This document shows, in pieces, positions 4,713 to 62,545 of a stretch of 64,000 nt of DNA. Positions within the stretch are counted from its first letter, which is position 1. Each line of letters opens with the position of its first letter. The position numbers and the translations under genes are program-made. The notes below the pieces were generated by a model. That model was not told where the DNA came from. It worked only from the letters and a program-made list of their open reading frames with translations, and ran no database searches. Source of the stretch: Octopus sinensis (lineage: Eukaryota); contig NC_043010.1 in assembly GCF_006345805.1 (NCBI RefSeq), positions 59,272,001 to 59,336,000 on the forward strand, written 5' to 3'.

Positions 4713-7088
4713 ATGTTACTGCCATTGACCTTTGTATTGTCAATGGTCCACTGTGTACTGACCATAGACCTTACCTACCATGTGGAAGAAGAGAGAAGTC
4801 CAGGAACATATGTAGCAGACATTGCTGCCGATTCTAAACTTTTAGACAATGTTAAACCATCTGACCAACATTTGATAACATTCAGTCAATTCAAACGAAA
4901 GGTGGCACAGTTATTTAATATCACCAAAACAGGTAAACTGTACACTGCTCAGACACTGGATGCAGAAGATCTCTGCACATTCAACAAAGAATGTTCCAGA
5001 ACTGTGAAAGTTATTATAAAGAAAGTGGAAACTTTCACAAAAATATTAAAAGTCAAAATTGTAATACAAGACATCAATGATCACAACCCTGAGTTTCTTA
5101 AGAATAATGTCAATATACTGTTTAGTGAAAATGATCGTAAAGGTGCAAAACAATCAATACCAAATGCCATGGACAAAGATGTTGGATTTCAAAATTCCTT
5201 AATTCAATATAAATTAAAATCAAAGAATGGAGAACCATTCTCTCTGTCAGTGTCTAAAAGAGCTGACGGTATTTCTTCTCTTAAAATAGTTTTAAAAGAA
5301 ACATTGGACAGAGAAATCAAAGATACATATTTATTACAGGTCATAGCTAAAGATGGGGGTTCACCAGCAAAACAAGGGATTTTGAATATAAATATTTCTG
5401 TAATAGATGTGAATGACAACCCACCAGAGTTTTCAAAACCTCTCTATAATATATCTATACAAAGTACACATCATAAATCCAAACCCATCATTGTTTTGTC
5501 TGTAACAGATGCTGATTCTGGTGAAAATGGTAAAATTACTTTCCATTTCAGCCGAAAGACATCAGATGTAACAAAAAGCTATTTTCAGTTAAATGAAACA
5601 AGTGGAAACATTTTATTAAGCAAATTCTCAAGTTTGGGGAAAAAGAATACCTATGAATTATTTGTAGAGGCCAGAGATGGAGGCAGCCCCCCACTCAGTT
5701 CCATAGCAACTGTTCTAGTAAATGTCATCAACCAACACAATAATCCTCCATCTATGGATATAGATTATGTTTCTGCACTCAATTATAACACAGGAACCAT
5801 TTCTGAAAACATCAAAGTTGGTAGTTTCCTTGCTTATGTGATGGTCACTGACAATGATGTGGGACAAAATGGAGAGGTCAGCTGTGATATCAAACATGAT
5901 ACATTCAAACTACAGTCAATGGGATCTAAAGAATATAAAATCATTCTAAACAAACCAGTGGACAGAGAAACACAAGGACACTATAACATTCCTGTCTCCT
6001 GTCAAGATAAAGGATTACCTCCTCTTAAAAGTGTTAAAAGCCTCTCTATCCAAGTGACTGACATCAACGATGTACAACCACAGTTTACCAAAGATACATT
6101 CCAATTCCTCACCTACGAAAACAAAGATAAAGACTTCCCTATTGGTTTTGTCAATGCCACTGACCCTGATCTTGGATCTGCTGGACAACTCACATATTCT
6201 CTGCTGCGTAAAGAAAAATCCAATCTCCCATTTCTCATCACCAGTTATGGCTTCATTTCAGCGACCATGTCATTGGACAGAGAGAAACAAGATGTGTATA
6301 AGTTTGAGGTTTTTGTCAAAGATAATGGAAGCCCATCTCTGAATGACACAGCGAATGTTGTTGTTGAGATTCTAGATCAAAATGACAATGCTCCGTATTT
6401 TACATATCCTAGTAGTGACCCTTACACGCTAAATGTGCAGTACCATCCGCAGAGTAAGAGTGACATCACAGTTTTGAGAGCCTCTGATGGGGACAGTGGA
6501 AACAATGCTTTCCTCAGATATGCAATCATACAAGGAAATGATAAACAGTTGTTTAGTATGAACTCACACAGTGGTGCTTTATCCTTCTCCAGACAAGTTT
6601 ATCTAAATGATGCTGGAAGTTATGAGCTGGTGTTTGTTGTGAAGGACAGTGGTAGTCCAGTTCAGTCGTCAACAACTAGTGTCACTTTAGTATTGGCTGT
6701 TAGTAACGAGACATCACCAATGTCGAAGAGTGGACCTTTACAATCTTCAGGTCGGGTCCATATGACATGGGTTATTATCATTGTATCATCAGCAGTAATA
6801 ATATCAGTGGCGATTGTTGTTTCTATAACGCTGTGTATTATGAAATGTATTAAACACAGAGATAACACAGCTGCTGCCACAAAGAATACAGCCTACCAAG
6901 GTAGAGCAGAGATGAAACAATTGTTGTACCAGACTAACACTTCTGTTGCTATGTCGAGGAATGCAGAAGAGATGGTGAAGCGGAATATCTATTCTGAGAG
7001 ATCCAAGAGTGAATGTTATGCAGAAGGTCAGCTACAGAACAAATATGAATCTTCGGTTCAATCAAGAACTTTACCAAAACCTACCCCA
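4713..7088 (+). CDS. Pcdh: Protocadherin gene 1, main coding exon (signal peptide, EC1-EC6, TM, proximal tail; 792 codons)
   Basis: Six cadherin repeats (DxE, DxNDxxP, DxD, DGGxP motifs), C-X5-C in EC1, hydrophobic TM WVIIIVSSAVIISVAIVVSITLCIM; acceptor TTTTAG|G at 4656/4657; donor CCA|GTAAGT at 7088/7089 (the ORF track reads into the intron to 7133). Confidence 0.93.
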
Positions 7089-7259
7089 GTAAGTGGAAAC
7101 ATTACATTTTCTCTCTGTGAAAGTGAACAATGAAATCTCTTTGAATATGTTTTAACTTCAATAATACATTCCAATATTAAATTGTTCTCTTTCCATGTTG
7201 ATTGTAACTTCCATTGTTTGGTGTCTTCTCACATTTCTTTATCGTTTGTTTGTCAACAG

Positions 7260-7413
7260 AAATACTGTCAACCTGTTGTGGTGACATCAAGTGATGATGC
7301 TGTGGAAGATAATGCTACTATGGTTTGTAACTATACATCAGATACAATGTCATCCAAGAGAAGTGGTAGACAAGGAGACTTGAAACATTATGAAGAAATA
7401 CCAGGAGTATCGG
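7260..7413 (+). CDS. Pcdh: Pcdh gene 1 second coding exon (KYCQPVV...KHYEEIPGVS)
   Basis: Acceptor TTTGTCAACAG|AAA, phase 0, in frame with the upstream exon; donor G|GTTAGT; conserved in genes 1-5. Confidence 0.85.
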
Positions 7414-8026: not shown

Positions 8027-8103
8027 ATCAAAATATTTATAAAAATAACGATTCATCAACATCAAAAGACTGTAGTGAAGAAACACCTGTGAAACACGTG
8101 TAA
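8027..8103 (+). CDS. Pcdh: Pcdh gene 1 terminal coding exon (D-QNIYKNNDSSTSKDCSEETPVKHV*)
   Basis: Acceptor TTCCAG|AT completes a phase-1 codon; 24 codons then TAA; homologous 77-nt exon present in five units. Confidence 0.85.
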
Positions 8104-8260: not shown

Positions 8261-8278
8261 AATATATATATGTGTATG

Positions 8279-8410: not shown

Positions 8411-8679
8411 AAAGCAGCAATACTAATGAAATAACAAAAGGTGTTTGATCTTAGAGTAATGGAGATATATCCTTATTGAAAAATGAACAAATATAAATTT
8501 TACTGAAATTTTTACTCGAATATTTTATTTCTAAGGAAAATTTTCATAAAAGTAAATAATTATCAATATTTTGTTTCTGTGAGAAAGGCATGAATATCAC
8601 TCAACTTCTTTTTATCTGCAATAAATATGCTAACTTCTAATTAGTCTAAAGAAATCAATATTAAAGAAAAAAAATTATC

Positions 8680-8710
8680 ATTGGTCTTCTGTTTAGGTCA
8701 TGCAGCCAAT
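8680..8710 (+). promoter_or_regulatory. Inverted CCAAT pair (ATTGG-N21-CCAAT), putative promoter of gene 2
   Basis: Same motif pair about 190-205 bp upstream of leader copies 2-6; TATA-like TATATAAATA near 8807. Confidence 0.6.
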
Positions 8711-8909
8711 CAGATTCCTGTAGAAGGAATTCACTAACAATGAAATTTACTCACACTATCGATGTTATTAAACCAAACAATTATGCTAAGTATACAGTAT
8801 TGTAGATATATAAATACATATCTCTATATATGTAATTAGTAATCATCTCTAAAAGTATATATATACACACACACACACAAAGTATCATCAGATGGACGTA
8901 CTCCCACAA

Positions 8910-9095
8910 AACATACAACTTCAGTGAGACATGCAACCCTCTCCTAGCAGCAGACTCTCTGCCTGACGTGCTACACTACTCCATCACCATAACAGCCATT
9001 GTCACACCATTACAGCAGCACTTACAATGGATCTTTCTACAACAATACATCTTTCTCTTTCTCACTGAATAACCAATGATATAATTATTAAAAAG
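8910..9095 (+). other. Putative non-coding leader exon of Pcdh gene 2
   Basis: 186-bp conserved block, donor AAG|GTAAGT at 9096. Confidence 0.75.
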
Positions 9096-13113: not shown

Positions 13114-15487
13114 ATGTTCCTATCGTTGTCTATTGTATTGTCACTGGTCCACTGTGTTTTGACCATAGACCTTACCTACCATGTGGAAGAAGAGAGAAGT
13201 CCAGGAACGTATGTAGCAGACATTGCTGCCGATTCTAAACTTTTGGACAATGTTAAACCATCTGACCAACATTTGATAACATTCAGTCAATTCAAACGAA
13301 AGGTGGCACAGTTATTTAATATCACCAAAACAGGTAAACTGTACACTGCTCAGACACTGGATGCAGAAGATCTCTGCACATTCAACAAAGAATGTTCCAG
13401 AACTGTGAAAGTTATTATAAAGAAAGTGGATAGTTTCACAAAAATATTAAAAGTCAAAATAGTAATAGAAGATATTAATGACCATGAACCTAAATTTCCT
13501 ATAAAGAATGTCAACATAGAGTTTGGAGAAGATGCCCGCATCAGTTCAAAAAGATCACTACCGAATGCCATAGACAAAGATGTTGGATTTCAAAATTCCT
13601 TAATTCAATATAAATTAAAATCAAAGAATGGAGAACCATTCTCTCTGTCAGTGTCTAAAAGAGCTGATGGTATTTCTTCACTTAATATAGTTTTAAAAGA
13701 AACATTAGACAGAGAAATGAAAGATACGTATTTATTACAGGTCATAGCTAAAGATGGAGGGTCACCAGCAAAACAAGGTATTCTAAATATAAATATTTCC
13801 ATAACAGATTTGAATGACAACCCACCAGAGTTTTCTAAACCTCTCTATAATATATCCATACAAAGTGCACATCACAAAGCTAAGCCCATCATTGTTTTGT
13901 CTGTGACTGATGCTGATTCTGGTGAAAATGGTAAAATTACTTTCCACTTCAGTCCAAAGACATCAGATCTAGCAAAAAGCTATTTCCTGTTAAATGAAAC
14001 CAGTGGAAATATTTTCTTAAGTAAATATTCGAGTCTAGGTAAAAAGAAAACTTATGAATTGTTTATTGAAGCCAGAGATGGGGGCACCCCACCCTTTAGT
14101 TCTATAGCAACAGTTCTAGTGAATGTTATCAACCAACACAATAATCCTCCATCTATGAATATAGATTATGTCTCTGCACTCAATTATAACACAGGTACCA
14201 TCTCTGAAAACATCAAAGTTGGTAGTTTCATTGCTTATGTGATGGTCACTGACAATGATGTGGGACAAAATGGAGAGGTCAGCTGTGATATCAAACATGA
14301 TACATTCAAACTACAGTCAATGGGATCTAAAGAATATAAAATCATTCTAAACAAACCAGTGGACAGAGAAACACAAGGACACTATAACATTCCTGTCTCC
14401 TGTCAAGATAAAGGATTACCTCCTCTGAAAAGTGTTAAAAGCCTCTCTATCCAAGTGACTGACATCAACGATGTACAACCACAGTTTACCAAAGATACAT
14501 TCCAATTCCTCACCTACGAAAACAAAGATAAAGACTTCCCTATGGTTTTGTCAATGCCACTGACCCTGATCTTGGATCTGCTGGACAACTCACATATTCT
14601 CTGCTGCGTAAAGAAAAATCCAATCTCCCATTTCTCATCACCAGTTATGGCTTCATTTCAGCGACCATGTCATTGGACAGAGAGAAACAAGATGTGTATA
14701 AGTTTGAGGTTTTTGTCAAAGATAATGGAAGCCCATCTCTGAATGACACAGCGAATGTTGTTGTTGAGATTCTAGATCAAAATGACAATGCTCCGTATTT
14801 TACGTATCCTAGTAGTGACCCTTACACGCTAAATGTGCAGTACCATCCGCAGAGTAAGAGTGACATCACAGTTTTGAGAGCGTCTGATGGGGACAGTGGA
14901 AACAATGCTTTCCTCAGATATGCAATCATACAAGGAAATGATAAACAGTTGTTTAGTATGAACTCACACAGTGGTGCTTTATCCTTCTCCAGACAAGTTT
15001 ATCTAAATGATGCTGGAAGTTATGAGCTGGTGTTTGTTGTGAAGGACAGTGGTAGTCCAGTTCAGTCGTCAACAACTAGTGTCACTTTGGTATTGGCTGT
15101 TAGTAACGAGACATCACCAATGTCGAAGAGTGGACCTTTACAATCTTCAGGTCGGGTCCATATGACATGGGTTATTATCATTGTATCATCAGCAGTAATA
15201 ATATCAGTGGCTATTGTTGTTTCTATAACGCTGTGTATTATGAAATGTATTAACACAGAGATAACACAGCTGCTGCCACAAAGAATACAGCCTACCAAGG
15301 TAGAGCAGAGATGAAACAATTGTTGTACCAGACTAACACTTCTGTTGCTATGTCGAGGAATGCAGAAGAGATGGTGAAGCGGAATATCTATTCTGAGAGA
15401 TCCAAGAGTGAATGTTATGCAGAAGGTCAGCTACAGAACAAATATGAATCTTCAGTTCAGTCGAGAACTTTACCAAAACCTACCCCA
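13114..15487 (+). pseudogene. Pcdh: Protocadherin gene 2 main exon with two 1-bp deletions (pseudogene or assembly errors)
   Basis: Acceptor at 13066/13067 and donor at 15487/15488; exon is 2374 nt versus 2376 in paralogs; missing T near 14543 (CCTATGG vs CCTATTGG) and missing A near 15253 (TTAACAC vs TTAAACAC); split into three ORFs in the track. Confidence 0.75.
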
Positions 15488-15658: not shown

Positions 15659-15812
15659 AAATACTGTCAACCTGTTGTGGTGACATCAAGTGATGATGCT
15701 GTGGAAGATAATGCTACTATGGTTTGTAACTATACATCAGATACAATGTCATCCAAGAGAAGTGGTAGACAAGGAGACTTGAAACATTATGAAGAAATAC
15801 CAGGAGTATCAG
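15659..15812 (+). CDS. Pcdh: Pcdh gene 2 second coding exon
   Basis: Near-identical to 7260-7413; donor G|GTTAGC. Confidence 0.8.
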
Positions 15813-19769: not shown

Positions 19770-19846
19770 ATCAAAATATATATAAAAACAATGGCACCTC
19801 TACATCAAAAGATTCCAGTGAAGAGACACCAGTGAAACATGTGTAA
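19770..19846 (+). CDS. Pcdh: Pcdh gene 2 terminal coding exon (D-QNIYKNNGTSTSKDSSEETPVKHV*)
   Basis: TTCCAG|AT acceptor, intact 77-nt exon. Confidence 0.8.
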
Positions 19847-24265: not shown

Positions 24266-26635
24266 ATGTTCCTGTCATTGTCTGTTGTATTGTCAATGGT
24301 CCACTGTGTCTTGACCATAGACCTTACTTACCATGTGGAAGAAGAGAGAAGTCCAGGAACATATGTAGCAGACATTGCTGCCGATTCTAAACTCTTAGAC
24401 AATGTTAAACCATCTGACCAACATTTGATAACATTCAGTCAATTCAAACGAAAGGTGGCACAGTTATTTAATATCACCAAAACAGGTAAACTATACACTG
24501 CTCAGACACTGGATGCAGAAGATCTCTGCACATTCAACAAAGAATGTTCCAGAACTATGAAAGTTATTATAAAGAAAGTGGATAGTTTCACAAAAATATT
24601 AAAAGTCAAAATAGTAATAGAAGACATTAATGACCATGAACCGGAGTTTCCTGAAAAACAAATAATTTTAAAGTTTGGTGAAGGAGATCGTGAAGGTATG
24701 AAAAAGTCAATTCCAAATGCCATAGACAAAGATGTGAGTTATCAAAATTCTTTCATTGAATATAAACTTAAAAAGTCTAATTCATTTTCTTTGTCAGTTT
24801 CTAAAAGAGCTGATGGTATTTCATCATTAAAGATTGTTTTAAAGGATAAATTAGACCGAGAGTTAAAAGATAAGTACAATTTAGAAGTTATTGCTAAAGA
24901 TGGAGGTTCTCCATCTAAACAGAATGTGTTAAATGTTGTGATTGTTGTTGACGATCAGAATGATAATCCACCTGTATTTTCAAAACCCCTTTATAATATT
25001 TCCATTAGAACCACACACGACAAAACAAAACCCATTCTTACTTTGTCAGTGACAGACAAAGATATTGGATCCAACAGTAAAATTACTTTCCATTTCAGCC
25101 CCAAAACTTCTGATTTGGCAAAGAAATATTTCGAATTGGATGAAAAAGCTGGCAAAGTATTTTTATCTAGAATTTCTAGTTTAAATGAAAAAACATCTTT
25201 TGAATTATTTATAGAAGCCAGAGATGGAGGTAACCCACCACTCAGTTCCATAGCAACTGTTTTGGTAAATGTTATCAACCAACACAATAATCCTCCATCT
25301 ATTGATATTGATTATGTCTCTGCAATCAGTGACAACACAGGTACCATCTCTGAAAAGATCAAAGTCGGTAGTTTCATTGCATATGTGATGGTCACTGACA
25401 ATGATGTGGGACAAAATGGAGAGGTCAGCTGTGATATCAAACATGATACATTCAAACTACAGTCAATGGGATCTAAAGAATATAAAATCATTCTAAACAA
25501 ACCAGTGGACAGAGAAACACAAGGACACTATAACATTCCTGTCTCCTGTCAAGATAAAGGATTACCTCCTCTTAAAAGTGTTAAAAGCCTCTCTATCCAA
25601 GTGACTGACATCAACGATGTACAACCACAGTTTACCAAAGATACATTCCAATTCCTCACCTACGAAAACAAAGATAAAGACTTCCCTATTGGTTTTGTCA
25701 ATGCCACTGACCCTGATCTTGGATCTGCTGGACAACTCACATATTCTCTGCTGCGTAAAGAAAAATCCAATCTCCCATTTCTCATCACCAGTTATGGCTT
25801 CATTTCAGCGACCATGTCATTGGACAGAGAGAAACAAGATGTGTATAAGTTTGAGGTTTTTGTCAAAGACAATGGAAGCCCATCTCTGAATGACACAGCG
25901 AATGTTGTTGTTGAGATTCTAGATCAAAATGACAATGCTCCGTATTTTACATATCCTAGTAGTGACCCTTACACGCTAAATGTGCAGTACCATCCGCAGA
26001 GTAAGAGTGACATCACAGTTTTGAGAGCCTCTGATGGGGACAGTGGAAACAATGCTTTCCTCAGATATGCAATCATACAAGGAAATGCTAAACAGTTGTT
26101 TAGTATGAACTCACACAGTGGTGCTTTATCCTTCTCCAGACAAGTTTATCTAAATGATGCCGGAAGTTATGAGCTGGTGTTTGTTGTGAAGGACAGTGGT
26201 AGTCCAGTTCAGTCGTCAACAACTAGTGTCACTTTGGTATTGGCTGTTAGTAACGAGACATCACCAATGTCGAAGAGTGGACCTTTACAATCTTCAGGTC
26301 GGGTCCATATGACATGGGTTATTATCATTGTATCATCAGCAGTAATAATATCAGTGGCTATTGTTGTTTCTATAACGCTGTGTATTATGAAATGTATTAA
26401 ACACAGAGATAACACAGCTGCTGCCACAAAGAATACAGCCTACCAAGGTAGAGCAGAGATGAAACAATTGTTGTACCAGACTAACACTTCTGTTGCTATG
26501 TCGAGGAATGCAGAAGAGATGGTGAAGCGGAATATCTATTCTGAGAGATCCAAGAGTGAATGTTATGCAGAAGGTCAGCTACAGAACAAATATGAATCTT
26601 CAGTTCAGTCGAGAACTTTACCAAAACCTACCCCA
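24266..26635 (+). CDS. Pcdh: Protocadherin gene 3 main coding exon (790 codons; 2-aa deletion in EC2)
   Basis: Intact ORF with six EC repeats and TM; acceptor at 24209/24210; donor CCA|GTAAGT. Confidence 0.93.
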
Positions 26636-26806: not shown

Positions 26807-26960
26807 AAATACTGTCAACCTGTTGTGGTGACATCAAGTGATGATGCTGTGGAAGATAATGCTACTATGGTTTGTAACTATACATCAGATACAATGTCAT
26901 CCAAGAGAAGTGGTAGACAAGGAGACTTGAAACATTATGAAGAAGTACCAGGAGTATCAG
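26807..26960 (+). CDS. Pcdh: Pcdh gene 3 second coding exon
   Basis: Near-identical 154-nt exon (YEEVP variant); canonical splice sites. Confidence 0.85.
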
Positions 26961-28334: not shown

Positions 28335-28411
28335 ATCAAAATATTTACAAAAATAACGATACATCTACTTCAAAAGATTCCAGTGAAGAAACACCTGTGA
28401 AACATGTATGA
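28335..28411 (+). CDS. Pcdh: Pcdh gene 3 terminal coding exon (D-QNIYKNNDTSTSKDSSEETPVKHV*)
   Basis: TTCCAG|AT acceptor, TGA stop. Confidence 0.85.
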
Positions 28412-36132: not shown

Positions 36133-38508
36133 ATGTTACTGTCGTTGTGTATTGTATTGTCACTGGTCCACTGTGTCCTGACCATAGACCTTACTTACCA
36201 TGTGGAAGAAGAGAGAAGTCCAGGAACATATGTAGCAGACATTGCTGCCGATTCTAAACTTTTAGACAATGTTAAACCATCTGACCAACATCTGATAACA
36301 TTCAGTCAATTCAAACGAAAGGTGGCACAGTTATTTAACATCACCAAAACAGGTAAACTGTACACTGCTCAGACACTGGATGCAGAAGATCTCTGCACAT
36401 TCAACAAAGAATGTTCCAGAACTGTGAAAGTTATTATAAAGAAAATGGAATCATTCACAAAAATATTAAAAGTCAAAATTGTAATAGAAGATATCAATGA
36501 CCATGAACCAGAGTTTCCTTTAAGGAACGTAAATATACAATTTGATGAAAATGACCGTAAAGGTTCTCAAGTATCACTACCGAATGCCATAGACAAAGAT
36601 GTTGGATTTCAAAATTCCTTAATACAATATAAATTAAAATCAAAGAATGGAGAACCATTCTCTCTGTCAGTGTCTAAAAGAGCTGATGGTATTTCTTCTC
36701 TGAAAATAGTTTTAAAAGAATCATTGGACAGAGAAGTCAAAGATACGTATTTATTACAGGTCATAGCTAAAGATGGTGGGTCACCAGCAAAACAAGGTAT
36801 TTTGAATATAAATATCTCTATAACAGATGCAAATGACAACCCACCAGAGTTTTCTAAACCTCTATACAATATATCCATACAAAGTGCACATCACAAATCT
36901 AAACCCATCATTATTTTGTCTGTAACTGATGCTGATTCAGGTGAAAATGGTAAAATTACTTTCCATTTCAGCCCCAAAACATCAGATTTGGCAAAAAGCT
37001 ATTTTCAGTTAAATGTAACCAATGGAAACATTTTCTTGAGTAAATACTCCAAGTTGGAAAAAAAGAAAACCTATGAATTATTTGTAGAGGCCAGGGATGG
37101 AGGCAGTCCTCCACTCAATTCCATTGCAACTGTTCTGGTAAATGTCATCAACCAACACAATAATCCTCCATCTATGGATATAGATTATGTCTCTGCACTC
37201 AATTATAACACAGGTACCATCTCTGAAAACATCAAAGTCGGTAGTTTCATTGCTTATGTGATGGTCACTGACAATGATGTGGGACAAAATGGAGAGGTCA
37301 GCTGTGATATCAAACATGATACATTCAAACTACAGTCAATGGGATCTAAAGAATATAAAATCATTCTAAACAAACCAGTGGACAGAGAAACACAAGGACA
37401 CTATAACATTCCTGTCTCCTGTCAAGATAAAGGATTACCTCCTCTCAAAAGTGTTAAAAGCCTCTCTATCCAAGTGACTGACATCAACGATGTACAACCA
37501 CAGTTTACCAAAGATACATTCCAATTCCTCACCTACGAAAACAAAGATAAAGACTTCCCTATTGGTTTTGTCAATGCCACTGACCCTGATCTTGGATCTG
37601 CTGGACAACTCACATATTCTCTGCTGCGTAAAGAAAAATCCAATCTCCCATTTCTCATCACCAGTTATGGCTTCATTTCAGCGACCATGTCATTGGACAG
37701 AGAGAAACAAGATGTGTATAAGTTTGAGGTTTTTGTCAAAGACAATGGAAGCCCATCTCTGAATGACACAGCGAATGTTGTTGTGGAGATTCTAGATCAA
37801 AATGACAATGCTCCGTATTTTACATATCCTAGTAGTGACCCTTACACGCTAAATGTGCAGTACCATCCGCAGAGTAAGAGTGACATCACAGTTTTGAGAG
37901 CCTCTGATGGGGACAGTGGAAACAATGCTTTCCTCAGATATGCAATCATACAAGGAAATGATAAACAGTTGTTTAGTATGAACTCACACAGTGGTGCTTT
38001 ATCCTTCTCCAGACAAGTTTATCTAAATGATGCTGGAAGTTATGAGCTGGTGTTTGTTGTGAAGGACAGTGGTAGTCCAGTTCAGTCGTCAACAACTAGT
38101 GTCACTTTGGTGTTGGCTGTTAGTAACGAGACATCACCAATGTCGAAAAGTGGACCTTTACAATCTTCAGGTCGGGTCCATATGACATGGGTTATTATCA
38201 TTGTATCATCAGCAGTAATAATATCAGTGGCTATTGTTGTTTCTATAACGCTGTGTATTATGAAATGTATTAAACACAGAGATAACACAGCTGCTGCCAC
38301 AAAGAATACAGCCTACCAAGGTAGAGCAGAGATGAAACAATTGTTGTACCAGACTAACACTTCTGTTGCTATGTCGAGGAATGCAGAAGAGATGGTGAAG
38401 CGGAATATCTATTCTGAGAGATCCAAGAGTGAATGTTATGCAGAAGGTCAGCTACAGAACAAATATGAATCTTCAGTTCAGTCGAGAACTTTACCAAAAC
38501 CTACCCCA
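36133..38508 (+). CDS. Pcdh: Protocadherin gene 4 main coding exon (792 codons)
   Basis: Intact ORF with six EC repeats and TM; acceptor TTTCAG|G at 36076/36077; donor CCA|GTAAGT. Confidence 0.93.
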
Positions 38509-38679: not shown

Positions 38680-38833
38680 AAATACTGTCAACCTGTTGTG
38701 GTGACATCAAGTGATGATGCTGTGGAAGATAATGCTACTATGGTTTGTAACTATACATCAGATACAATGTCATCCAAGAGAAGTGGTAGACACGGAGACT
38801 TGAAACATTACGAAGAAATACCAGGAGTATCAG
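38680..38833 (+). CDS. Pcdh: Pcdh gene 4 second coding exon
   Basis: Near-identical 154-nt exon. Confidence 0.85.
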
Positions 38834-42001: not shown

Positions 42002-42078
42002 ACCAAAATATTTATAAAAACAATGGGACGTCTGCATCAAAAGATTCTAGTGAAGAAACACCAGTGAAACAAGTGTAA
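42002..42078 (+). CDS. Pcdh: Pcdh gene 4 terminal coding exon (D-QNIYKNNGTSASKDSSEETPVKQV*)
   Basis: TTCCAG|AC acceptor, TAA stop. Confidence 0.85.
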
Positions 42079-48853: not shown

Positions 48854-51229
48854 ATGTTACTGCCATTGACCTTTGTATTCTCACTGGTCCAGTGTGTCCT
48901 GACCATAGACCTTACCTACCATGTGGAAGAAGAGAGAAGTCCAGGAACATATGTAGCAGACATTGCTGCCGATTCTAAACTCTTAGACAATGTTAAACCA
49001 TCTGACCAACATTTGATAACATTCAGTCAATTCAAACGAAAGGTGGCACAGTTATTTAACATCACCATAACAGGTAAACTGTACACTGCTCAGACACTGG
49101 ATGCAGAAGATCTCTGCACATTCAACAAAGAATGTTCTAGAACTGTCAAAGTTATTATAAAGAAAGTGGATAGCTTCACAAAAATATTAAAAGTCAAAAT
49201 TGTAATAGAAGACATCAATGACCACGAACCAGAGTTTCCTATAAAGAATGTGAATATACAATTTGATGAAGACATTGGTAAAGGTGCAAAAAGATCAATA
49301 CCAAATGCCATAGATGATGACATAGGTTTTCAAAATTCATTAATACAATATAAATTAAAATCAAAGAATGGAGAACCATTCTCTCTATCAGTTTCTAAAA
49401 GAGCTGATGGTATTTCTTCTCTTAAAATAGTTTTGAAAGAATCATTAGACAGAGAAATCAAAGATACATATTTATTACAAGTCATAGCTAAAGATGGAGG
49501 TTCGCCAGCAAAACAAGGTGTTTTAAATATAAATATTTCTATAACAGATGTGAATGACAACCCACCTGTATTTTCTAAACCTTTCTATAATATATCCATA
49601 CAAAGTACACATCACAAATCCAAACCCATCATTGTTTTATCTGTAACAGATGCTGATTCAGGTGAAAATGGTAAAATTACTTTCCATTTCAGTCCAAAGA
49701 CATCAGATTTAGCCAAAAGCTATTTTCTTTTAAATGAAACCAGTGGAAGCATTTTCTTGAGTAAATACTCCAAGTTGGAAAAAAAGAAAACCTATGAACT
49801 GTTCATAGAGGCCAGGGACGGAGGCAGCCCTCCACTCAATTCCATTGCAACTGTTCTGGTAAATGTCATCAACCAACACAATAATCCTCCATCTATGGAT
49901 ATAGATTATGTTAATGCACTCAATTATAACACAGGTACCATCTCTGAAAACATCAAAGTCGGTAGTTTCATTGCTTATGTGATGGTCACTGACAATGATG
50001 TGGGACAAAATGGAGAGGTCAGCTGTGGTATCAAACATGATACATTCAAACTACAGTCAATGGGATCTAAAGAATATAAAATCATTCTCAACAAACCAGT
50101 GGACAGAGAAACACAAGGACACTATAACATTCCTGTCTCCTGTCAAGATAAAGGATTACCTCCTCTGAAAAGTGTTAAAAGCCTCTCTATCCAAGTGACT
50201 GACATCAACGATGTACAACCACAGTTTACCAAAGATACATTCCAATTCCTCACCTACGAAAACAAAGATAAAGACTTCCCTATTGGTTTTGTCAATGCCA
50301 CTGACCCTGATCTTGGATCTGCTGGACAACTCACATATTCTCTGCTGCGTAAAGAAAAATCCAATCTCCCATTTCTCATCACCAGTTATGGCTTCATTTC
50401 AGCGACCATGTCATTGGACAGAGAGAAACAAGATGTGTATAAGTTTGAGGTTTTTGTCAAAGACAATGGAAGCCCATCTCTGAATGACACAGCGAATGTT
50501 GTTGTTGAGATTCTAGATCAAAATGACAATGCTCCGTATTTTACATATCCTAGTAGTGACCCTTACACGCTAAATGTGCAGTACCATCCGCAGAGTAAGA
50601 GTGACATCACAGTTTTGAGAGCGTCTGATGGGGACAGTGGAAACAATGCTTTCCTCAGATATGCAATCATACAAGGAAATGATAAACAGTTGTTTAGTAT
50701 GAACTCACACAGTGGTGCTTTATCCTTCTCCAGACAAGTTTATCTAAATGATGCTGGAAGTTATGAGCTGGTGTTTGTTGTGAAGGACAGTGGTAGTCCA
50801 GTTCAGTCGTCAACAACTAGTGTCACTTTGGTATTGGCTGTTAGTAACGAGACATCACCAATGTCGAAGAGTGGACCTTTACAATCTTCAGGTCGGGTCC
50901 ATATGACATGGGTTATTATCATTGTATCATCAGCAGTAATAATATCAGTGGCTATTGTTGTTTCTATAACGCTGTGTATTATGAAATGTATTAAACACAG
51001 AGATAACACAGCTGCTGCCACAAAGAATACAGCCTACCAAGGTAGAGCAGAGATGAAACAATTGTTGTACCAGACTAACACTTCTGTTGCTATGTCGAGG
51101 AATGCAGAAGAGATGGTGAAGCGGAATATCTATTCTGAGAGATCCAAGAGTGAATGTTATGCAGAAGGTCAGCTACAGAACAAATATGAATCTTCAGTTC
51201 AGTCGAGAACTTTACCAAAACCTACCCCA
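48854..51229 (+). CDS. Pcdh: Protocadherin gene 5 main coding exon (792 codons)
   Basis: Intact ORF with six EC repeats and TM; acceptor at 48797/48798; donor CCA|GTAAGT. Confidence 0.93.
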
Positions 51230-51400: not shown

Positions 51401-51554
51401 AAATACTGTCAACCTGTTGTGGTGACATCAAGTGATGATGCTGTGGAAGATAATGCTACTATGGTTTGTAACTATACATCAGATACAATGTCATCCAAGA
51501 GAAGTGGTAGACAAGGAGACTTGAAACATTATGAAGAAATACCAGGAGTATCAG
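51401..51554 (+). CDS. Pcdh: Pcdh gene 5 second coding exon
   Basis: Near-identical 154-nt exon; donor G|GTTAGC. Confidence 0.85.
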
Positions 51555-56208: not shown

Positions 56209-56285
56209 ATCAAAGTATTTATAAAAACAATGACACATCTACATCAAAAGATTCTAGTGAAGAAACACCAGTGAAACATGTCTAA
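56209..56285 (+). CDS. Pcdh: Pcdh gene 5 terminal coding exon (D-QSIYKNNDTSTSKDSSEETPVKHV*)
   Basis: TTTCAG|AT acceptor, TAA stop. Confidence 0.85.
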
Positions 56286-56813: not shown

Positions 56814-57003
56814 CAGATTCTCTCTAAAACATGCAAAGAAACCACTAAGAAAGCTAAGCATTCGCATTACTGGTGTTATTAAACCAGTTATGTTTAAATG
56901 TAGAATATTCTAGCTATATAAATACACATCTATATATCTATATATATGTAGACTGTCATAAGTAACAATAGACAAACATCATCTTTAAGGACAAATGCTT
57001 ACA

Positions 57004-57189: not shown

Positions 57190-60169
57190 GTAAGTTTCCA
57201 TTTAATCTCTTATAATCTCATTTTAATTTATTATCACTCACTGAATCTGTAAATGATTGAATAATTATTCACATATTTTTCACTAAAATTGTCTGTATTG
57301 ACAGTTCTTTTTGTCTTTTGTTTTTTTGTCCTCTTCTCCCTTCACAATTGGATGATGTTGCATGAAACATTTAATATTTAGAGTTAAAATTGTTTCAGGA
57401 AAACAATTTGAAAATAAAGGAGATAAAAATAGTAGTAAAATGAAACAAAACATTATAAAGATTTTTTCTTTATATTTTTAATTTGAAGTAGAAAGTAAGG
57501 GTGTAAATCATTGTTTTACTATGCTTCTCTCTGTCTACTCTGATTTCTGATTTTCATTCCATTGGCTTTACGAACAATCTTTATCTCACGGTACTTTCAT
57601 TTAAGCCTTTCTCCTACTCAGCTGACGATGCTCTGGTTAATTCAGCTGGAAATGAATACCAGCAGAAGCTGTGGGTTAATCTTGCATGAGATTAGCTTCT
57701 GTTCAGGAATCATGTACTCTCAGTTACTTAAACAATGCAATAATCTCCAACCTAATTACTCTGTAGACCTGAGAGAGGGAGAGAGATTTAATTTAACTTT
57801 AACTCTAATATTTATATTTTTTTCAATTGAATCCAAACTATGTTTCTATAATATTTGTTACACGTATGTCGGCTATTGTTACTTATCCCAATATAAGTGT
57901 TGCTTTTGATGTATGGAAAATGTAATATTTTGTCGGTATCATTAGATTGCATTTGAAAGATATGTTAGGGATAAAATATGAAGAAATATACCAGAAGTTT
58001 AATAATAGTGTGTTGGTTGTTGGTAGTGATGAGGCACTGGTGTGTTAGAGTTCTGGGTTGAAGATAATGGTGGACACCACTGTCAGGAAGTGAATAGTAA
58101 TGAGAAAGTCTTTAACAGATTGAATATAAAGTGAAGAATCTGTCCTGTTGGATTAAATTTGTAATGTATCTTTTTATTATTGTTCAGGATAGATTATAAA
58201 TGAATTAATTCAGAGAGAATTTCAACAGTAATTTCTATAATTATTTGAACAGTTTGATGTCATTTTATTCATGATGGAATTGCATTCATCATATTAACTG
58301 GGAAACAATGAATACATCATTGCAATGTTACAATCATATGTGTGAACTTTTAAAATGTATGGGTATATGCTTAACATGCACTTCAGTCTTTTCATGAAAA
58401 AAACGGTTAGCATGTCTTTAGAAATTACCCAAATACTTGGTTAATGTTACAGAAATTTCTGATTACTTCTTTTTGAGAATCTAAAATCAAGTTTTTGGGA
58501 AAGCAGAAGATCTGAAATCCGTATTATTGGTAACGATTTCAAAATGCTTTAACAGATTTTAAACATCCATTTTTTTCTATTCCCAGTATCAAAAATATGG
58601 CTGGTTACAATAAGTTTGTACAAATATTATATTTTTATTTTCGTCACTGCCATAATGGCTTCAAAAAAATGAGTGACTGGTAAAAGTGAAAGGTACTATA
58701 TGTTATTTCTTTTCAAAATTAACCATTTAATTAACAAACTTGATTTCATTTTTGGATTTGGTTTGCAAGATTCTTTATGTGAGTTTGTGTGTTGAAGCAT
58801 CTTTTGTTGTGTCTGAAGAGAGTCATTCTCTTTTGGTGCCTTATAATTTAACACTCACCAGTAAAATTTCCACTCATTTCCTTCTTTATTTTTCTAAAAT
58901 CTTTGTTGTGTCTTGCAACCTTTTCAAAACTATTGAAAAGGTTGCAAGACACAATGAAGATTTTAGAAAAATTGCTGCAATAAAATCCTCTTCTGTTTCT
59001 AACTCTCATTTGTAATACGAAGTCATATTTCATTTCATCTCACTAACTTTTAGATACTAACTACTTTTATTAACCACTTTTTTCTCTATATAATAAATAC
59101 TGGCTAGTTCTTCTTTCTTTTTCTTTTCAAATATCAAGTTGATGCTTCCATTTTTGTTCCTCAAGAAAAGTTGTAACATTTCTAGACTACCAGAGTTACA
59201 AATAATACCACCTTCTTTCATGCTTCAAAGAATTGGTTGAAAATATTTCATTTGTAAGAATATTTGGGAGATTCCATGCAGTTGCTCAACTTACTCAGAG
59301 TAGCAGCCAAATCCATTTCAAATCTCACCCTACCATTGAAAAAGAAACACACATAAGATAATGTGGTCATGGTTTGAATGCTTCTAAATCATAGCTCCAT
59401 CTGGGTTGACAACAACAACAACATGCAATTATAGACTAAAATGAGGCCCCTAATTTTTGCATAAAATTGAATGTAAAAGATTATAATTAACTGTAGTGTG
59501 GAAATCATTTTTTTTTTTTTTTAGTCGGAAACTGATTACAGCTTTGGTTTTTACTACATTGGTGCTGATAAAAGATATACCTGTAAAATACCAAGGGTGA
59601 TTTATTTGATTCAGAGGTTAAAAAAGGATTTAGAACTAAAAAAGAAATCTTTGTGTACCAATACCAATTATATTTTTATTAATTAATTATATATTTTTTC
59701 CTGTTACCATTTATTCACTCCTAGAAGTTCACACAAGACTTCCATCAATTTATTGTCATTGTTTCCATGAAGACACTGCAGCAGTTCTGCTTTTACTAAT
59801 GATGTACTTTGTACAAGACAAATTATTTTCCTTTTATTATTAACTCAAGTAATGATATTATCAACACAATTTAAAGTGAGGTAAATTATATTGCACACTC
59901 TTTCAAAATATAGCTTTATTAACAGACATATTCTGTGGATTTTTCTCCATTGTTGTCTTGTGTGAATAGACAAAATGTTGATGTAATATTGTATGTCAGC
60001 ATATGATGATTTCACATGTTAATAATAATAATAATAATAATAAATTCCTAACATGATGTTACCTTGTTATAACATACATATTAAATCTAATCTGATGTAA
60101 TTATATCTCTTTTTAGGTTCCATGCACCACATAACTACACGCACAGAACCAAGACCAACATAAAACAAC

Positions 60170-62545
60170 ATGTTCCTGTCATTTTCTATTGTATTGTCAA
60201 TGGTCCACTGTGTCTTGACCATAGACCTTACCTACCATGTGGAAGAAGAGAGAAGTCCAGGAACATATGTAGCAGACATTGCTGCCGATTCTAAACTTTT
60301 AGACAATGTTAAACCATCTGACCAACATTTGATAACATTCAGTCAATTCAAACGAAAGGTGGCACAGTTATTTAACATCACCAAAACAGGTAAACTGTAC
60401 ACTGCTCAGACACTGGATGCAGAAGATCTCTGCACATTCAACAAAGAATGTTCCAGAACTCTTAAAGTTGTTGTCAATAAAGGGACCAGTGTTTCAAAAA
60501 TATTAAAAATCAAGATAGTAATAGAAGATATCAATGACCATCACCCTGAGTTTCCCAAAAACCAAATTTCATTAAAGTTCTCAGAAACAGATGGAAAAGG
60601 CACAAAACGATCAATACCTAATGCTATGGACAAAGATGTAGGATTTCAAAATTCCTTAATACAATATAAATTAAAATCAAAGAATGGAGAACCATTCTCT
60701 CTGTCAGTGTCTAAAAGAGCTGATGGTATTTCTTCTCTTAAAATAGTTTTAAAAGAATCATTAGACAGAGAAGTCAAAGATACGTATTTATTACAGGTCA
60801 TAGCTAAAGATGGAGGTTCACCAGCAAAACAAGGTATTCTGAACATAAACATCTCTGTGACAGATGAGAATGACAACCCACCTGTATTTTCTAAACCTCT
60901 ATACAATATATCCATACAAAGTACACATCATAAGTCTAAACCCATCATTGTTTTATCTGTAACTGATGCTGATGCTGGTGAAAATGGTAAAATTACTTTC
61001 CATTTCAGTCCAAAAACATCAGATATTGTAAAAAGCTATTTTCAGTTAAATGAAACCAGTGGAAGCATTTTGTTAAGGGAATATTCAAATCTGAGTAAAA
61101 AGAAAACCTATGAACTTTTTATAGAGGCCAGAGATGGGGGCAACCCTCCTCTCAGTTCTATAGCAACAGTTTTAGTGAATGTTATCAACCAACACAACAA
61201 TCCTCCATCTATTGATATTGATTATGTTAATGCAATCAATGACAACACAGCTACCATTTCTGAAAACATCAAAGTTGGTAGTTTCATTGCTTATGTGATG
61301 GTCACTGACAATGATGTGGGACAAAATGGAGAGGTCAGCTGTGATATCAAACATGATACATTCAAACTACAGTCAATGGGATCTAAAGAATATAAAATCA
61401 TTCTAAACAAACCAGTGGACAGAGAAACACAAGGACACTATAACATTCCTGTCTCCTGTCAAGATAAAGGATTACCTCCTCTTAAAAGTGTTAAAAGCCT
61501 CTCTATCCAAGTGACTGACATCAACGATGTACAACCACAGTTTACCAAAGATACATTCCAATTCCTCACCTACGAAAACAAAGATAAAGACTTCCCTATT
61601 GGTTTTGTCAATGCCACTGACCCTGATCTTGGATCTGCTGGACAACTCACATATTCTCTGCTGCGTAAAGAAAAATCCAATCTCCCATTTCTCATCACCA
61701 GTTATGGCTTCATTTCAGCGACCATGTCATTGGACAGAGAGAAACAAGATGTGTATAAGTTTGAGGTTTTTGTCAAAGACAATGGAAGCCCATCTCTGAA
61801 TGACACAGCGAATGTTGTTGTTGAGATTCTAGATCAAAATGACAATGCTCCGTATTTTACATATCCTAGTAGTGACCCTTACACGCTAAATGTGCAGTAC
61901 CATCCGCAGAGTAAGAGTGACATCACAGTTTTGAGAGCCTCTGATGGGGACAGTGGAAACAATGCTTTCCTCAGATATGCAATCATACAAGGAAATGATA
62001 AACAGTTGTTTAGTATGAACTCACACAGTGGTGCTTTATCCTTCTCCAGACAAGTTTATCTAAATGATGCTGGAAGTTATGAGCTGGTGTTTGTTGTGAA
62101 GGACAGTGGTAGTCCAGTTCAGTCGTCAACAACTAGTGTCACTTTGGTATTGGCTGTTAGTAACGAGACATCACCAATGTCGAAAAGTGGACCTTTACAA
62201 TCTTCAGGTCGGGTCCATATGACATGGGTTATTATCATTGTATCATCAGCAGTAATAATATCAGTGGCTATTGTTGTTTCTATAACGCTGTGTATTATGA
62301 AATGTATTAAACACAGAGATAACACAGCTGCTGCCACAAAGAATACAGCCTACCAAGGTAGAGCAGAGATGAAACAATTGTTGTACCAGACTAACACTTC
62401 TGTTGCTATGTCGAGGAATGCAGAAGAGATGGTGAAGCGGAATATCTATTCTGAGAGATCCAAGAGTGAATGTTATGCAGAAGGTCAGCTACAGAACAAA
62501 TATGAATCTTCAGTTCAAAGCAGAACCCTTCCTAAACCATCTTCA
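60170..62545 (+). CDS. Pcdh: Protocadherin gene 6 main coding exon (792 codons)
   Basis: Intact ORF; acceptor at 60116/60117; donor TCA|GTAAGA at the position homologous to the other copies. Confidence 0.92.

What the first reader, a model, noticed from the sequence alone, without database searches (positions are those of the whole stretch)
4713..62545. Cephalopod protocadherin array with a constant chassis and a variable EC1-end/EC2/EC3 module, convergent with the vertebrate self-recognition code
Seen: across six paralogs, mature EC1 residues about 17-97 and everything from early EC4 to the TM and tail are almost identical at DNA level, including synonymous sites. By eye, genes 1 and 4 differ at only about 15 positions over about 1.6 kb. 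Residues about 98-155 and 230-360 vary strongly. EC2 start: g1 LKNNVNILFSENDRKGAKQS, g2 PIKNVNIEFGEDARISSKRS, g3 PEKQIILKFGEGDREGMKKS, g4 PLRNVNIQFDENDRKGSQVS, g5 PIKNVNIQFDEDIGKGAKRS, g6 PKNQISLKFSETDGKGTKRS, with many charge changes. Established: vertebrate clustered Pcdhs bind homophilically through an antiparallel EC1-EC4 interface whose specificity resides largely in EC2-EC3, and they show domain-restricted gene conversion; cephalopod Pcdhs expanded independently. Inference: gene conversion homogenises the structural and signalling chassis while a specificity module diversifies, an independently evolved neuronal barcode system built from complete genes.
Basis: partly seen in the sequence, partly recalled or inferred. 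Interest (0 to 1): 0.9.

Follow-up and report, generated by a model that had tools for sequence, protein, structure and literature searches.

The report
Octopus protocadherin array with block-wise gene conversion
Six neighbouring octopus protocadherin genes keep most of their sequence almost identical by copying DNA between each other, while a 0.8 kb stretch encoding cadherin repeats 2-3 keeps very old gene-specific differences; vertebrate brain "barcode" protocadherins show the same layout, but here its function is untested.

Summary
The window is Octopus sinensis CM016872.1:59,272,001-59,336,000 and holds six same-strand protocadherin genes from an array of at least 13.

- **dS by block.** Among the six genes, synonymous divergence is 0.067 in codons 18-97 (EC1), 0.64 in codons 98-365 (end of EC1, EC2, EC3, start of EC4), and 0.03 from codon 366 to the end of the large exon.
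- **DNA-level homogenisation.** Intron 1 (171 nt) and exon 2 are 98-99% identical among g1-g5, while the outer flanks cannot be aligned.
- **Cross-species test.** Argonauta hians has the same block boundaries. The constant block is species-specific (protein distance 0.01 within species, 0.106 between). The variable block contains at least four paralogue lineages shared by both genera.

This is concerted evolution by short-tract gene conversion. It is not young duplication, an assembly artefact or synonymous-site constraint.

- **No positive selection detected.** dN/dS is about 0.2 in the variable block, and no site shows a nonsynonymous excess.
- **Corrections to the gene models.** Each gene has its own two small 3' exons and a splice acceptor 62 nt before the ATG. 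g2 carries two frameshifts.
- **Wider pattern.** Four other octopod sub-arrays show the same jump to near-identity at the start of EC4.

Homophilic barcoding remains an inference.

The parts
4713..7088 (+). g1 large coding exon (792 codons: signal peptide, EC1-EC6, TM, proximal cytoplasmic part). The ORF continues to 7133 only by reading into intron 1.
   Evidence: donor GTAAGT at 7089
4764..5003 (+). g1 homogenised block 1 (codons 18-97, EC1 strands A-F). The equivalent block sits at the same offset in g2-g6.
   Evidence: 98.2% identity, dS 0.067, dN 0.002
5004..5807 (+). g1 variable block (codons 98-365: EC1 F-G, EC2, EC3, first strand of EC4). It has two deep cores at codons 121-160 and 291-340.
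   Evidence: dS 0.64, dN 0.117; dS peaks of 1.1 and 0.9; every gene has a unique type in both cores
5808..7413 (+). g1 homogenised block 2: codon 366 to the end of the large exon, intron 1 (7089-7259) and exon 2 (7260-7413).
   Evidence: 99.2% (exon), 98.4% (intron 1) and 99.0% (exon 2) identity among g1-g5; identity collapses within 40 nt of intron 2
8027..8103 (+). g1 terminal coding exon with stop codon; not homogenised.
13114..15487 (+). g2 large exon, with 1-nt deletions just before 14543 and 15252 (frameshifts). Variable block 13405-14208.
15659..15812 (+). g2 exon 2
19770..19846 (+). g2 terminal coding exon
24266..26635 (+). g3 large exon (790 codons; in-frame 6-nt deletion at 24773). 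Variable block 24557-25354 belongs to the 'PEKQ' lineage, which is shared with Argonauta.
26807..26960 (+). g3 exon 2
28335..28411 (+). g3 terminal coding exon
36133..38508 (+). g4 large exon; variable block 36424-37227
38680..38833 (+). g4 exon 2
42002..42078 (+). g4 terminal coding exon
48854..51229 (+). g5 large exon; variable block 49145-49948. Product is identical to XP_029645409.1.
51401..51554 (+). g5 exon 2
56209..56285 (+). g5 terminal coding exon
60170..62545 (+). g6 large exon; variable block 60461-61264. The homogenised tract stops about 10 nt before the exon end.
63167..63312 (+). g6 exon 2, of a different type that is shared with O. vulgaris P0136 and Argonauta P0007. g6's terminal exon lies beyond the window.
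4637..4651 (+). Conserved polypyrimidine-AG (putative 3' splice acceptor) about 62 nt upstream of the g1 ATG. The same element lies near 13050, 24203, 36070, 48790 and 60107.
   Evidence: Conserved in all 22 Octopus and Argonauta genes examined, with unalignable sequence upstream; used as an acceptor in NCBI model XP_036365284.1
8648..9459 (+). Non-homogenised conserved element (probably 3'UTR) starting 470-560 nt after the terminal exon of g1. Copies also at 2-586, 20401-21148, 28891-29990, 42598-43689 and 56755-57252.
   Evidence: 75-87% identity, one copy per unit, same orientation

Best explanation
The window is the distal part of a tandem array of at least 13 complete, same-strand protocadherin genes in Octopus sinensis. 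The paralogues are old: several lineages predate the Octopus-Argonauta split.

Two segments of every gene are continually overwritten by short-tract, non-reciprocal gene conversion between array members:
- about 240 nt encoding EC1 strands A-F;
- about 1.6 kb running from early EC4 through EC5, EC6, the TM and the cytoplasmic region, across intron 1 and exon 2, ending within about 40 nt of intron 2.

The 0.8 kb between them (EC1 F-G hairpin, EC2, EC3, first strand of EC4) is not overwritten. Either conversions that replace its two cores (the EC2 A strand / A-B loop region and EC3 strands D-G) are selected against, or divergence there is already too great for heteroduplex formation, or both.

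The result is a set of receptors with one shared body and tail and gene-specific EC2-EC3 surfaces.

What is shown: the conversion, its boundaries, their conservation across genera, and the antiquity of the variable lineages.

What is inferred by analogy with vertebrate clustered and delta protocadherins: the constant EC1 and EC4 would form the generic affinity contact of an antiparallel EC1-4 trans dimer, EC2-EC3 would set homophilic specificity, and the shared EC5-6/TM/tail would keep cis-assembly and signalling interchangeable.
For: (1) dS contrast. dS is 0.03 (codons 366-792) and 0.067 (codons 18-97) against 0.64 (codons 98-365) among the six genes. Per domain in 12 O. sinensis genes: EC1 0.17, EC2 0.54, EC3 0.67, EC4 0.07, EC5 0.021, EC6 0.03.

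(2) Non-coding homogenisation. Intron 1 is 98.4% identical among g1-g5. The 5' flank beyond -120, intron 2 beyond +40 and the intergenic DNA are unalignable, and the 3'UTR-like element is only 75-87% identical.

(3) Constant block is species-specific. Protein distance is 0.01 within Octopus and within Argonauta but 0.106 between them. The block is species-monophyletic at 98-100% bootstrap. At DNA level dS is 0.03-0.05 within species and 0.34 between.

(4) Variable block has trans-species clades. The PEKQ lineage has 98-99% support and P0004+P0013 has 84%. In codons 98-160, the g6 type plus P0005/P0007 has 80% and P0125/6 plus P0006 has 71%. g6's exon-2 type and its position near the array end are also shared with Argonauta.

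(5) Same boundaries in Argonauta. Its dS profile changes at codons about 98 and about 365. A neighbouring single-copy orthologue pair has a flat dS of 0.45-0.85.

(6) Mosaic typing. The 14 Octopus genes show one type in each constant block, 14 types in each core, and incongruent shared types in between. Significant pairwise tracts occur inside the variable block.

(7) Core 1 is conserved within lineages across species (dN 0.075-0.125 at dS >= 0.74) but differs between paralogues (dN 0.24).

(8) Fold. The AF2 model of EC1-4 (pLDDT 84.9) matches delta-2 and clustered Pcdh EC1-4 crystal structures at E about 1e-44 and TM 0.6-0.7.

(9) Vertebrate precedent: PMC4978886 and PMC5001838.
Against: - No positive selection was detected. 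dN/dS is 0.18-0.23 in the variable block and no site has a significant nonsynonymous excess. Escape from conversion could therefore be a passive consequence of pre-existing divergence.
- Between-species dS of the converted block (0.23-0.37) is about half that of the neighbouring single-copy gene (0.40-0.70). Neutral conversion does not predict this.
- In other octopod sub-arrays EC1 is as variable as EC2-3 while EC4 is constant. This weakens the idea of a matched constant EC1:EC4 pair.
- There is no binding, expression or structural-interface evidence for octopus proteins. None was found in the searchable literature either.
- Raw reads were not available to verify the assembly directly.
Confidence: 0.85

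Rival explanations
1. Conversion without selection. The constant blocks are homogenised, and the variable block escapes only because it was already too diverged in the common ancestor for heteroduplex formation. It would then carry no special recognition function.
For: dN/dS is about 0.2 with no site-level excess. The same boundaries in Octopus and Argonauta could simply be inherited. Conversion tracts do intrude where divergence is lower, at codons 98-120, 161-229 and 341-370.
Against: The variable block's dN over the Octopus-Argonauta interval (0.10-0.12) is about 2.5 times that of the same block in the single-copy neighbour (0.045). Core 1 types are conserved within lineages yet differ between paralogues. 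The escape region coincides with the domains that set specificity in vertebrates (PMC5001838).
Confidence: 0.25
2. Young duplicates plus rapid positive selection. The genes duplicated recently, so most of the sequence is still identical, and EC2-3 diverged quickly under diversifying selection.
For: Near-identity of about 1.8 kb per gene.
Against: Synonymous divergence in the variable block is 0.3-1.2 with dN/dS 0.18. Intergenic DNA and intron 2 are unalignable and the 3'UTR element is 75-87% identical. Variable lineages are shared with Argonauta.
Confidence: 0.02
3. Assembly, collapse or polishing artefact that copied one consensus onto the conserved parts of all paralogues.
For: The O. sinensis assembly carries likely indel errors (the two 1-nt deletions in g2). 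O. bimaculoides has only a fragment of this sub-array on a 6.2 kb contig.
Against: The same block pattern appears in three independent assemblies: O. sinensis GCA_006345805.1, O. vulgaris GCA_951406725.2 and A. hians GCA_054771915.1. Every paralogue carries the same species-specific substitutions. Thirty real polymorphic sites remain in the constant block, including variants (I/K606, D/A610) that recur among paralogues of both Octopus species.
Confidence: 0.03
4. Purifying selection on synonymous sites and the intron (for example RNA-editing structures, which are abundant in cephalopod protocadherin transcripts), without any conversion.
For: Between-species dS of the constant block is lower than in the neighbouring gene. 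Extensive RNA editing of cephalopod protocadherins is reported (cited in PMC6339937).
Against: Constraint cannot make paralogues that split before the species divergence differ by dS 0.03 when the species differ by dS 0.34 in the same block. It may contribute to the reduced between-species rate.
Confidence: 0.03
5. Unequal crossing-over within the coding region homogenises the 3' halves of the genes.
For: Tandem, same-orientation array with about 11.5 kb spacing.
Against: Crossovers would also homogenise everything downstream (intron 2, terminal exon, 3'UTR, intergenic DNA), which is not observed. In addition, two separate blocks are homogenised with an unhomogenised block between them.
Confidence: 0.03

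Closest known systems
Vertebrate clustered protocadherins (Pcdh alpha/beta/gamma): domain-restricted gene conversion (Noonan et al. 2004, cited in PMC4978886)
   Same: Tandem same-strand array of large single exons, each encoding six EC repeats, the TM and a proximal tail. dS is highest in EC2/EC3 and lowest in EC5/EC6. The predicted EC1-4 fold matches solved structures.
   Different: - Independent expansion: about 30% identity, and no closer to clustered than to delta-2 Pcdhs.
- No shared constant exons; each gene has its own 3' exons.
- The contrast is much sharper: highest/lowest dS is about 30 here, against 2-5 in mouse and Xenopus.
- The tract includes EC4, most of EC1, an intron and a downstream exon.
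- A splice acceptor, not a promoter, lies immediately upstream of each large exon.
Vertebrate Pcdh-beta cluster
   Same: Complete genes without constant exons, arranged in tandem.
   Different: Beta genes are single-exon; these octopus genes have at least four exons. Beta EC1 and EC4 are not homogenised to this degree.
Octopus/squid protocadherin expansions as described (Albertin 2015 via PMC6339937; Albertin 2022, PMC9068888)
   Same: Same gene family and the same chromosome-scale clusters. Those papers mention gene conversion as a possible reason for very similar sequences.
   Different: The papers I could read give no domain-resolved analysis, no tract boundaries, no cross-genus test and no variable/constant architecture.
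Concerted evolution with selected escape regions (for example MHC peptide-binding exons, or KIR/opsin arrays; from general knowledge)
   Same: Conversion homogenises flanking parts, while old, trans-species sequence types persist at the functional recognition segment and local dS peaks there.
   Different: Here the units are paralogues in an array, not alleles. No excess of nonsynonymous change was detected.

Membership tests
Protocadherin (cadherin superfamily) | N-terminal Cadherin_2-type EC1 followed by five more EC repeats with DxNDxxP calcium-binding linkers | tested here: met
   Pfam Cadherin (5 stretches, E = 5e-73) plus Cadherin_2 at residues 20-103. Linkers are visible at about 119-128, 231-240, 337-348, 448-458 and 555-565.
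Protocadherin (cadherin superfamily) | Whole ectodomain and TM encoded by one large exon | tested here: met
   2376-nt exon from the ATG to the GTAAGT donor.
Protocadherin (cadherin superfamily) | EC1-4 fold like solved protocadherin EC1-4 structures | tested here: met
   AF2 model pLDDT 84.9. Foldseek top hits are Pcdh8.1, Pcdh17, Pcdh18, gammaC4 and gammaA1 at E about 1e-44, TM 0.6-0.7.
Vertebrate-type clustered Pcdh locus | Tandem array of variable large exons in one orientation | tested here: met
   Six in the window and six more directly upstream.
Vertebrate-type clustered Pcdh locus | Variable exons spliced to shared constant exons (alpha and gamma clusters) | tested here: not met
   Each gene has its own exon 2 and terminal exon.
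Vertebrate-type clustered Pcdh locus | Own promoter immediately upstream of each variable exon | tested here: inconclusive
   A conserved splice acceptor lies 62 nt before each ATG. No conserved leader exon or promoter block was found in the intergenic DNA.
Vertebrate-type clustered Pcdh locus | Gene conversion that spares EC2-EC3 | tested here: met
   Per-domain dS. Compare the table in PMC4978886.
Vertebrate-type clustered Pcdh locus | Isoform-specific homophilic trans binding through antiparallel EC1-4 | not testable with these tools
   Only a monomer model without coordinates was available. No octopus binding data were found in the searchable literature.
Vertebrate-type clustered Pcdh locus | Stochastic, combinatorial expression in single neurons | not testable with these tools
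Concerted evolution by gene conversion | Paralogues within a species more alike than orthologues between species in the converted segment | tested here: met
   Protein distance 0.01 versus 0.106; dS 0.03-0.05 versus 0.34; species monophyly at 98-100%.
Concerted evolution by gene conversion | The same genes show cross-species orthology in an unconverted segment | tested here: met
   Trans-species clades with 71-99% bootstrap.
Concerted evolution by gene conversion | Silent sites and non-coding DNA inside the tract homogenised, flanks not | tested here: met
   Intron 1 is 98.4% identical; intron 2, the 5' flank and intergenic DNA are unalignable.
Diversifying (positive) selection on a recognition module | dN/dS above 1 in the region or at sites | tested here: not met
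   dN/dS is 0.18-0.23 for the region and at most 0.45 in windows. No site has P < 0.15. The methods were crude (NG86 and parsimony counts); codeml was not available.

The most novel reading that the evidence does not exclude
Octopod protocadherin sub-arrays may have independently arrived at the vertebrate 'variable head / constant body' isoform design. They would achieve it by sharply bounded gene conversion instead of splicing to constant exons.

On this reading:
- the EC2 and EC3 cores are ancient recognition types, older than the Octopus-Argonauta split, that set strict homophilic specificity;
- the homogenised EC4-EC6/TM/tail (and, in this sub-array, EC1) keep cis-assembly, generic trans affinity and signalling interchangeable.

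That would make this a convergent neuronal self-recognition code.
Probability: 0.35. Interest if true: 0.85.

Novelty: new variant of a known kind. Interest (0 to 1): 0.66.

Why it matters
Cephalopods expanded protocadherins independently of vertebrates. Whether the expansion serves a comparable recognition function is an open question.

**Evolutionary signature.** The octopod arrays carry the same signature as vertebrate clustered protocadherins, in a sharper form, produced by conversion alone and stable across genera.

**Testable targets.** The analysis points to the 0.8 kb that should carry specificity. It names two cores, codons 121-160 and 291-340, to swap in binding assays.

**Practical consequences.**
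- Whole-gene trees of cephalopod protocadherins are misleading. Only the EC2-3 block carries orthology signal.
- Short-read mapping, 5'/3' single-cell assignment and assembly of these genes must rely on the variable block or on the terminal exon and 3'UTR.

Tried and rejected
- **GENECONV-like run test.** It conditions on polymorphic sites, so it cannot see the constant blocks. It was useful only for tracts inside the variable block. The distribution of polymorphic sites was tested by chi-square instead.
- **Parsimony per-site S/N counts with segment-specific trees.** No positively selected sites were found. Power is low and recombination inflates both counts.
- **Nearest-neighbour distances.** These alone could reflect rate differences between species, so bootstrap trees were used as well.
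- **DNA look-ups.** Two failed because only the longest isoform is indexed (P0125, P0132).
- **Search for a conserved leader exon or promoter block in the six intergenic regions.** It found only the 3'UTR-like element.
- **Pfam scan of ten intergenic ORFs and a tandem-repeat scan.** Nothing was found.
- **Mapping variable residues onto the trans interface.** This was not possible. The structure tool returns no coordinates, and the interface residue lists are in figures I could not read. Only qualitative correspondences could be made from the text of PMC5001838: the EC1 beta6-beta7 loop with the EC4 loop after beta1a, and the EC3 Phe-X10-Phe loop.
- **Unavailable papers.** Noonan 2004 and Albertin 2015 are not held in the library. 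They are cited only through papers that quote them.


Full report
**What is in the window.**
- The window holds six long + strand ORFs spaced about 11.5 kb apart. All are protocadherins: Pfam finds Cadherin_2 plus five Cadherin stretches (E = 5e-73).
- g5 is identical to O. sinensis XP_029645409.1.
- Window bases 1-856 equal CM016872.1 locus L008 22308-23163 at 100%. The window is therefore O. sinensis CM016872.1:59,272,001-59,336,000.
- Six further members lie directly upstream, so the array has at least 13 genes.

**Gene structure.**
- Annotated homologues are about 60 residues longer than the ORFs. tblastn places those residues in a private 154-nt exon and a private terminal exon behind each gene.
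- The large exon ends at ...KPTP followed by GTAAGT. The last 14-20 ORF codons are intron read-through.
- There are no shared constant exons.
- g2 has two 1-nt deletions, in a TT run and an AAA run. It is either a recent pseudogene or carries assembly indels.
- A polypyrimidine-AG is conserved 62 nt before every ATG in 22 Octopus and Argonauta genes, and sequence upstream of it is unalignable. NCBI's fused 5410-residue model uses it as an acceptor. At least one 5' exon is therefore unlocated.

- Mean pairwise identity is about 98% for nt 60-300, 70-90% for nt 300-1080, and 99-100% for nt 1140-2340.
- 302 of 804 columns are polymorphic in codons 98-365, against 39 of 1521 in the two constant blocks (chi-square 512, p = 2e-113).
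- Nei-Gojobori dS is 0.067 (codons 18-97), 0.64 (codons 98-365; range 0.32-1.2) and 0.032 (codons 366-792).
- The quoted peptides are exact.

**The homogenisation acts on DNA, not on protein.**
- Intron 1 (171 nt) is 98.4% identical and exon 2 is 99.0% identical among g1-g5.
- Identity falls to 55% in the first 40 nt of intron 2 and to random levels beyond that. It is also random beyond about -120 nt upstream.
- The only other sequence shared by all units is a 0.5-1.1 kb element about 500 nt after each terminal exon. It is 75-87% identical and is probably 3'UTR. Its divergence matches that of the unconverted coding block.
- This pattern excludes recent whole-unit duplication. It also excludes unequal crossing-over, which would homogenise downstream flanks.

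**Cross-species test.** I compared the window genes with O. sinensis and O. vulgaris paralogues and with ten Argonauta hians paralogues.

| Block | Within Octopus | Within Argonauta | Between genera | Tree result |
|---|---|---|---|---|
| Codons 366-792, protein distance | 0.010 | 0.009 | 0.106 | Each genus monophyletic, 98-100% bootstrap |
| Codons 366-792, dS | 0.033 | 0.049 | 0.34 | n/a |

- In codons 98-365, every Argonauta gene is nearer to some Octopus gene than to any Argonauta gene.
- Trees of that block recover trans-species clades: the PEKQ lineage containing g3 (98-99%) and P0004+P0013 (84%).
- In codons 98-160, two further clades appear: the g6 type with P0005/P0007 (80%) and P0125/6 with P0006 (71%).
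- g6 also shares a distinct exon-2 type with Argonauta P0007, and both sit next to last at the array end.
- So paralogues older than the genus split nevertheless have near-identical, species-specific constant blocks. That is concerted evolution.

**Calibration.**
- A neighbouring single-copy orthologue pair (O. bimaculoides P0014 and A. hians P0015) has a flat dS of 0.45-0.85 across all domains.
- Variable-block dS for co-orthologues (g3 against the Argonauta PEKQ genes) is 0.75-0.81, which equals that yardstick.
- The constant blocks therefore coalesce at roughly 5-8% of the Octopus-Argonauta divergence.
- Per-domain dS in O. sinensis and in Argonauta:

| Domain | O. sinensis | Argonauta |
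|---|---|---|
| EC1 | 0.17 | 0.46 |
| EC2 | 0.54 | 1.30 |
| EC3 | 0.67 | 1.15 |
| EC4 | 0.07 | 0.10 |
| EC5 | 0.021 | 0.037 |
| EC6 | 0.03 | 0.047 |

- The block boundaries are the same in both genera.
- The highest/lowest dS ratio is about 30. It is 2-5 for mouse and Xenopus clustered Pcdhs (PMC4978886).

**Fine structure of the variable block.**
- dS has two peaks, at codons 121-150 (about 1.1) and 291-340 (about 0.9), with a trough at 161-210 (0.15-0.26).
This gives one type in each constant block and 14 different types in each core. Codons 98-120, 161-229 and 341-370 show shared but mutually incongruent types.
- One example is the two-state EC1 G-strand cassette (IIKKV.. or VVNKG..), which is found combined with the same EC2 type.
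- Significant pairwise tracts occur inside the block, for example g2-g3 at nt 294-355 and g4-g6 at nt 472-568.
- Conversion therefore also shuffles the edges and the middle of the block but does not enter the two cores.
- On the AF2 model (pLDDT 84.9), core 1 is the EC1-EC2 linker plus the EC2 A strand, A-B loop and B strand. Variability there alternates at positions 130/132/134/136/138/140.
- Core 2 is EC3 strands D-G and their loops.
- Hot spots at the block edges are the EC1 F-G loop (105-107) and the EC4 loop after the first strand (354-356). In vertebrate dimers these two elements contact each other, according to the text of PMC5001838.

**Selection.**
- dN/dS is 0.18 (pairwise) or 0.23 (tree counts) in the variable block and never exceeds 0.45 in 20-codon windows. 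No site has a significant nonsynonymous excess; the most variable sites evolve at about the neutral rate.
- Over the Octopus-Argonauta interval the block's dN (0.10-0.12) is about 2.5 times that of the same block in the single-copy neighbour (0.045).
- In core 1, same-type pairs across species have dN 0.075-0.125 at dS >= 0.74. Paralogues differ by dN 0.24. This is isoform-specific conservation, not ongoing diversification.
- Core 2 shows no such contrast.
- The data fit "old, conserved, protected from homogenisation" better than "rapidly diversifying". They cannot separate selection against core-replacing conversions from a passive divergence barrier.

**Generality.** Four other sub-arrays, two in O. 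sinensis and two in A. hians, show protein identity jumping to 0.97-1.00 from about residue 360-390 through to the C-terminus. In them EC1-EC3 identity is 0.5-0.9. EC1 in those sub-arrays is as variable as EC2-3, or exists as alternative types. The constant EC1 is therefore special to this sub-array, whereas the boundary at the start of EC4 is family-wide.

**Comparison with what is known.**
- The EC1-4 model and sequence match vertebrate delta-2 and clustered Pcdhs about equally, at about 30% identity.
- Vertebrate clusters show conversion that spares EC2-3 (PMC4978886). In them EC1/EC4 provide affinity and EC2/EC3 provide specificity (PMC5001838).
- The cephalopod papers I could read mention gene conversion only generically (PMC6339937, PMC9068888). 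Searches for concerted evolution, diversifying selection or binding assays in cephalopod Pcdhs found nothing.
- I rate this a new variant of a known kind.

**Rivals.**
- An assembly artefact is unlikely. Three independent assemblies show the pattern, with species-specific fixed differences and residual shared polymorphisms.
- Synonymous constraint, for example from RNA editing, cannot yield a within-species dS of 0.03 when the between-species dS is 0.34. It may explain why the between-species dS is only about half the yardstick. That discrepancy remains unexplained.

**Verdict.**
- The conversion and variable-module interpretation is supported and can be extended.
- Diversifying selection was not detected.
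- The neuronal barcode function is plausible but untested.

Noticed in passing
window 14543 and 15252 (g2): There are two 1-nt deletions relative to all paralogues, in a TT run and an AAA run, and each shifts the frame. g2's dN/dS is no higher than that of its neighbours, so this is either a very recent pseudogene or an assembly indel. NCBI's fused model skips g1 and g2.
   Followed up: partly
window ~4637-4651, ~13050, ~24203, ~36070, ~48790, ~60107; also L001-L004, L007-L009: A conserved polypyrimidine-AG lies 62 nt upstream of every ATG in both genera, with unalignable sequence upstream of it. It is probably a 3' splice acceptor, so an unlocated 5' exon and promoter must exist. NCBI model XP_036365284.1 (5410 aa) joins the exon 2 donor of one gene to this acceptor in the next gene.
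   Followed up: partly
window 2-586, 8648-9459, 20401-21148, 28891-29990, 42598-43689, 56755-57252: A 0.5-1.1 kb element occurs once per unit, always 470-560 nt after the terminal coding exon, at 75-87% identity. It is probably 3'UTR. It is not homogenised and could serve to tell paralogues apart in 3'-end RNA-seq.
   Followed up: partly
window 62535-63312 (g6): g6's homogenised tract stops about 10 nt before the end of the large exon. Its intron 1 and exon 2 are of a different type, which is shared with O. vulgaris P0136 and Argonauta P0007. This is a second, independent marker of an ancient paralogue lineage.
   Followed up: yes
codons 366-792 of all array genes (window, L001, L003, L004): Between-species synonymous divergence of the converted block (0.23-0.37) is only about half that of the neighbouring single-copy gene (0.40-0.70). 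Neutral concerted evolution does not predict this. It may reflect synonymous constraint (RNA editing?) or conversion bias.
   Followed up: no
proteins P0021-P0023, P0043, P0076; P0031, P0041, P0084, P0118; P0024-P0067 group; P0077-P0114 group: Four other octopod protocadherin sub-arrays show the same jump to 97-100% protein identity from early EC4 to the C-terminus. In them EC1-EC3 are variable, so the architecture is family-wide.
   Followed up: partly
window 5004-5072 and equivalents (codons 98-120): The EC1 F-G hairpin exists in two cassette forms (IIKKV[DE][ST]F..KV or VVNKG[TR]S[VI]..KI). Both forms are found combined with the same EC2 types, and both occur in Argonauta too. This is evidence of shuffling by conversion.
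   Followed up: partly
window 24773 (g3): An in-frame 6-nt deletion in EC2 (KSKNGEP becomes KKSNS) is shared by the PEKQ-lineage proteins.
   Followed up: no
window 18200-18900 and about 34000-36000: These are strongly C/T-rich, low-complexity stretches with GC skew about -0.33. The first lies in intron 2 of g2 and the second in the g3-g4 intergenic region. They have no ORF with a Pfam match and no tandem repeat.
   Followed up: partly
P0091 (O. bimaculoides, 467 aa, 6.2 kb contig): Among the top hits, O. bimaculoides is represented in this sub-array only by a fragment on a small contig, although its single-copy neighbour P0014 sits on a chromosome. The near-identical blocks may have broken or collapsed that assembly.
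   Followed up: no
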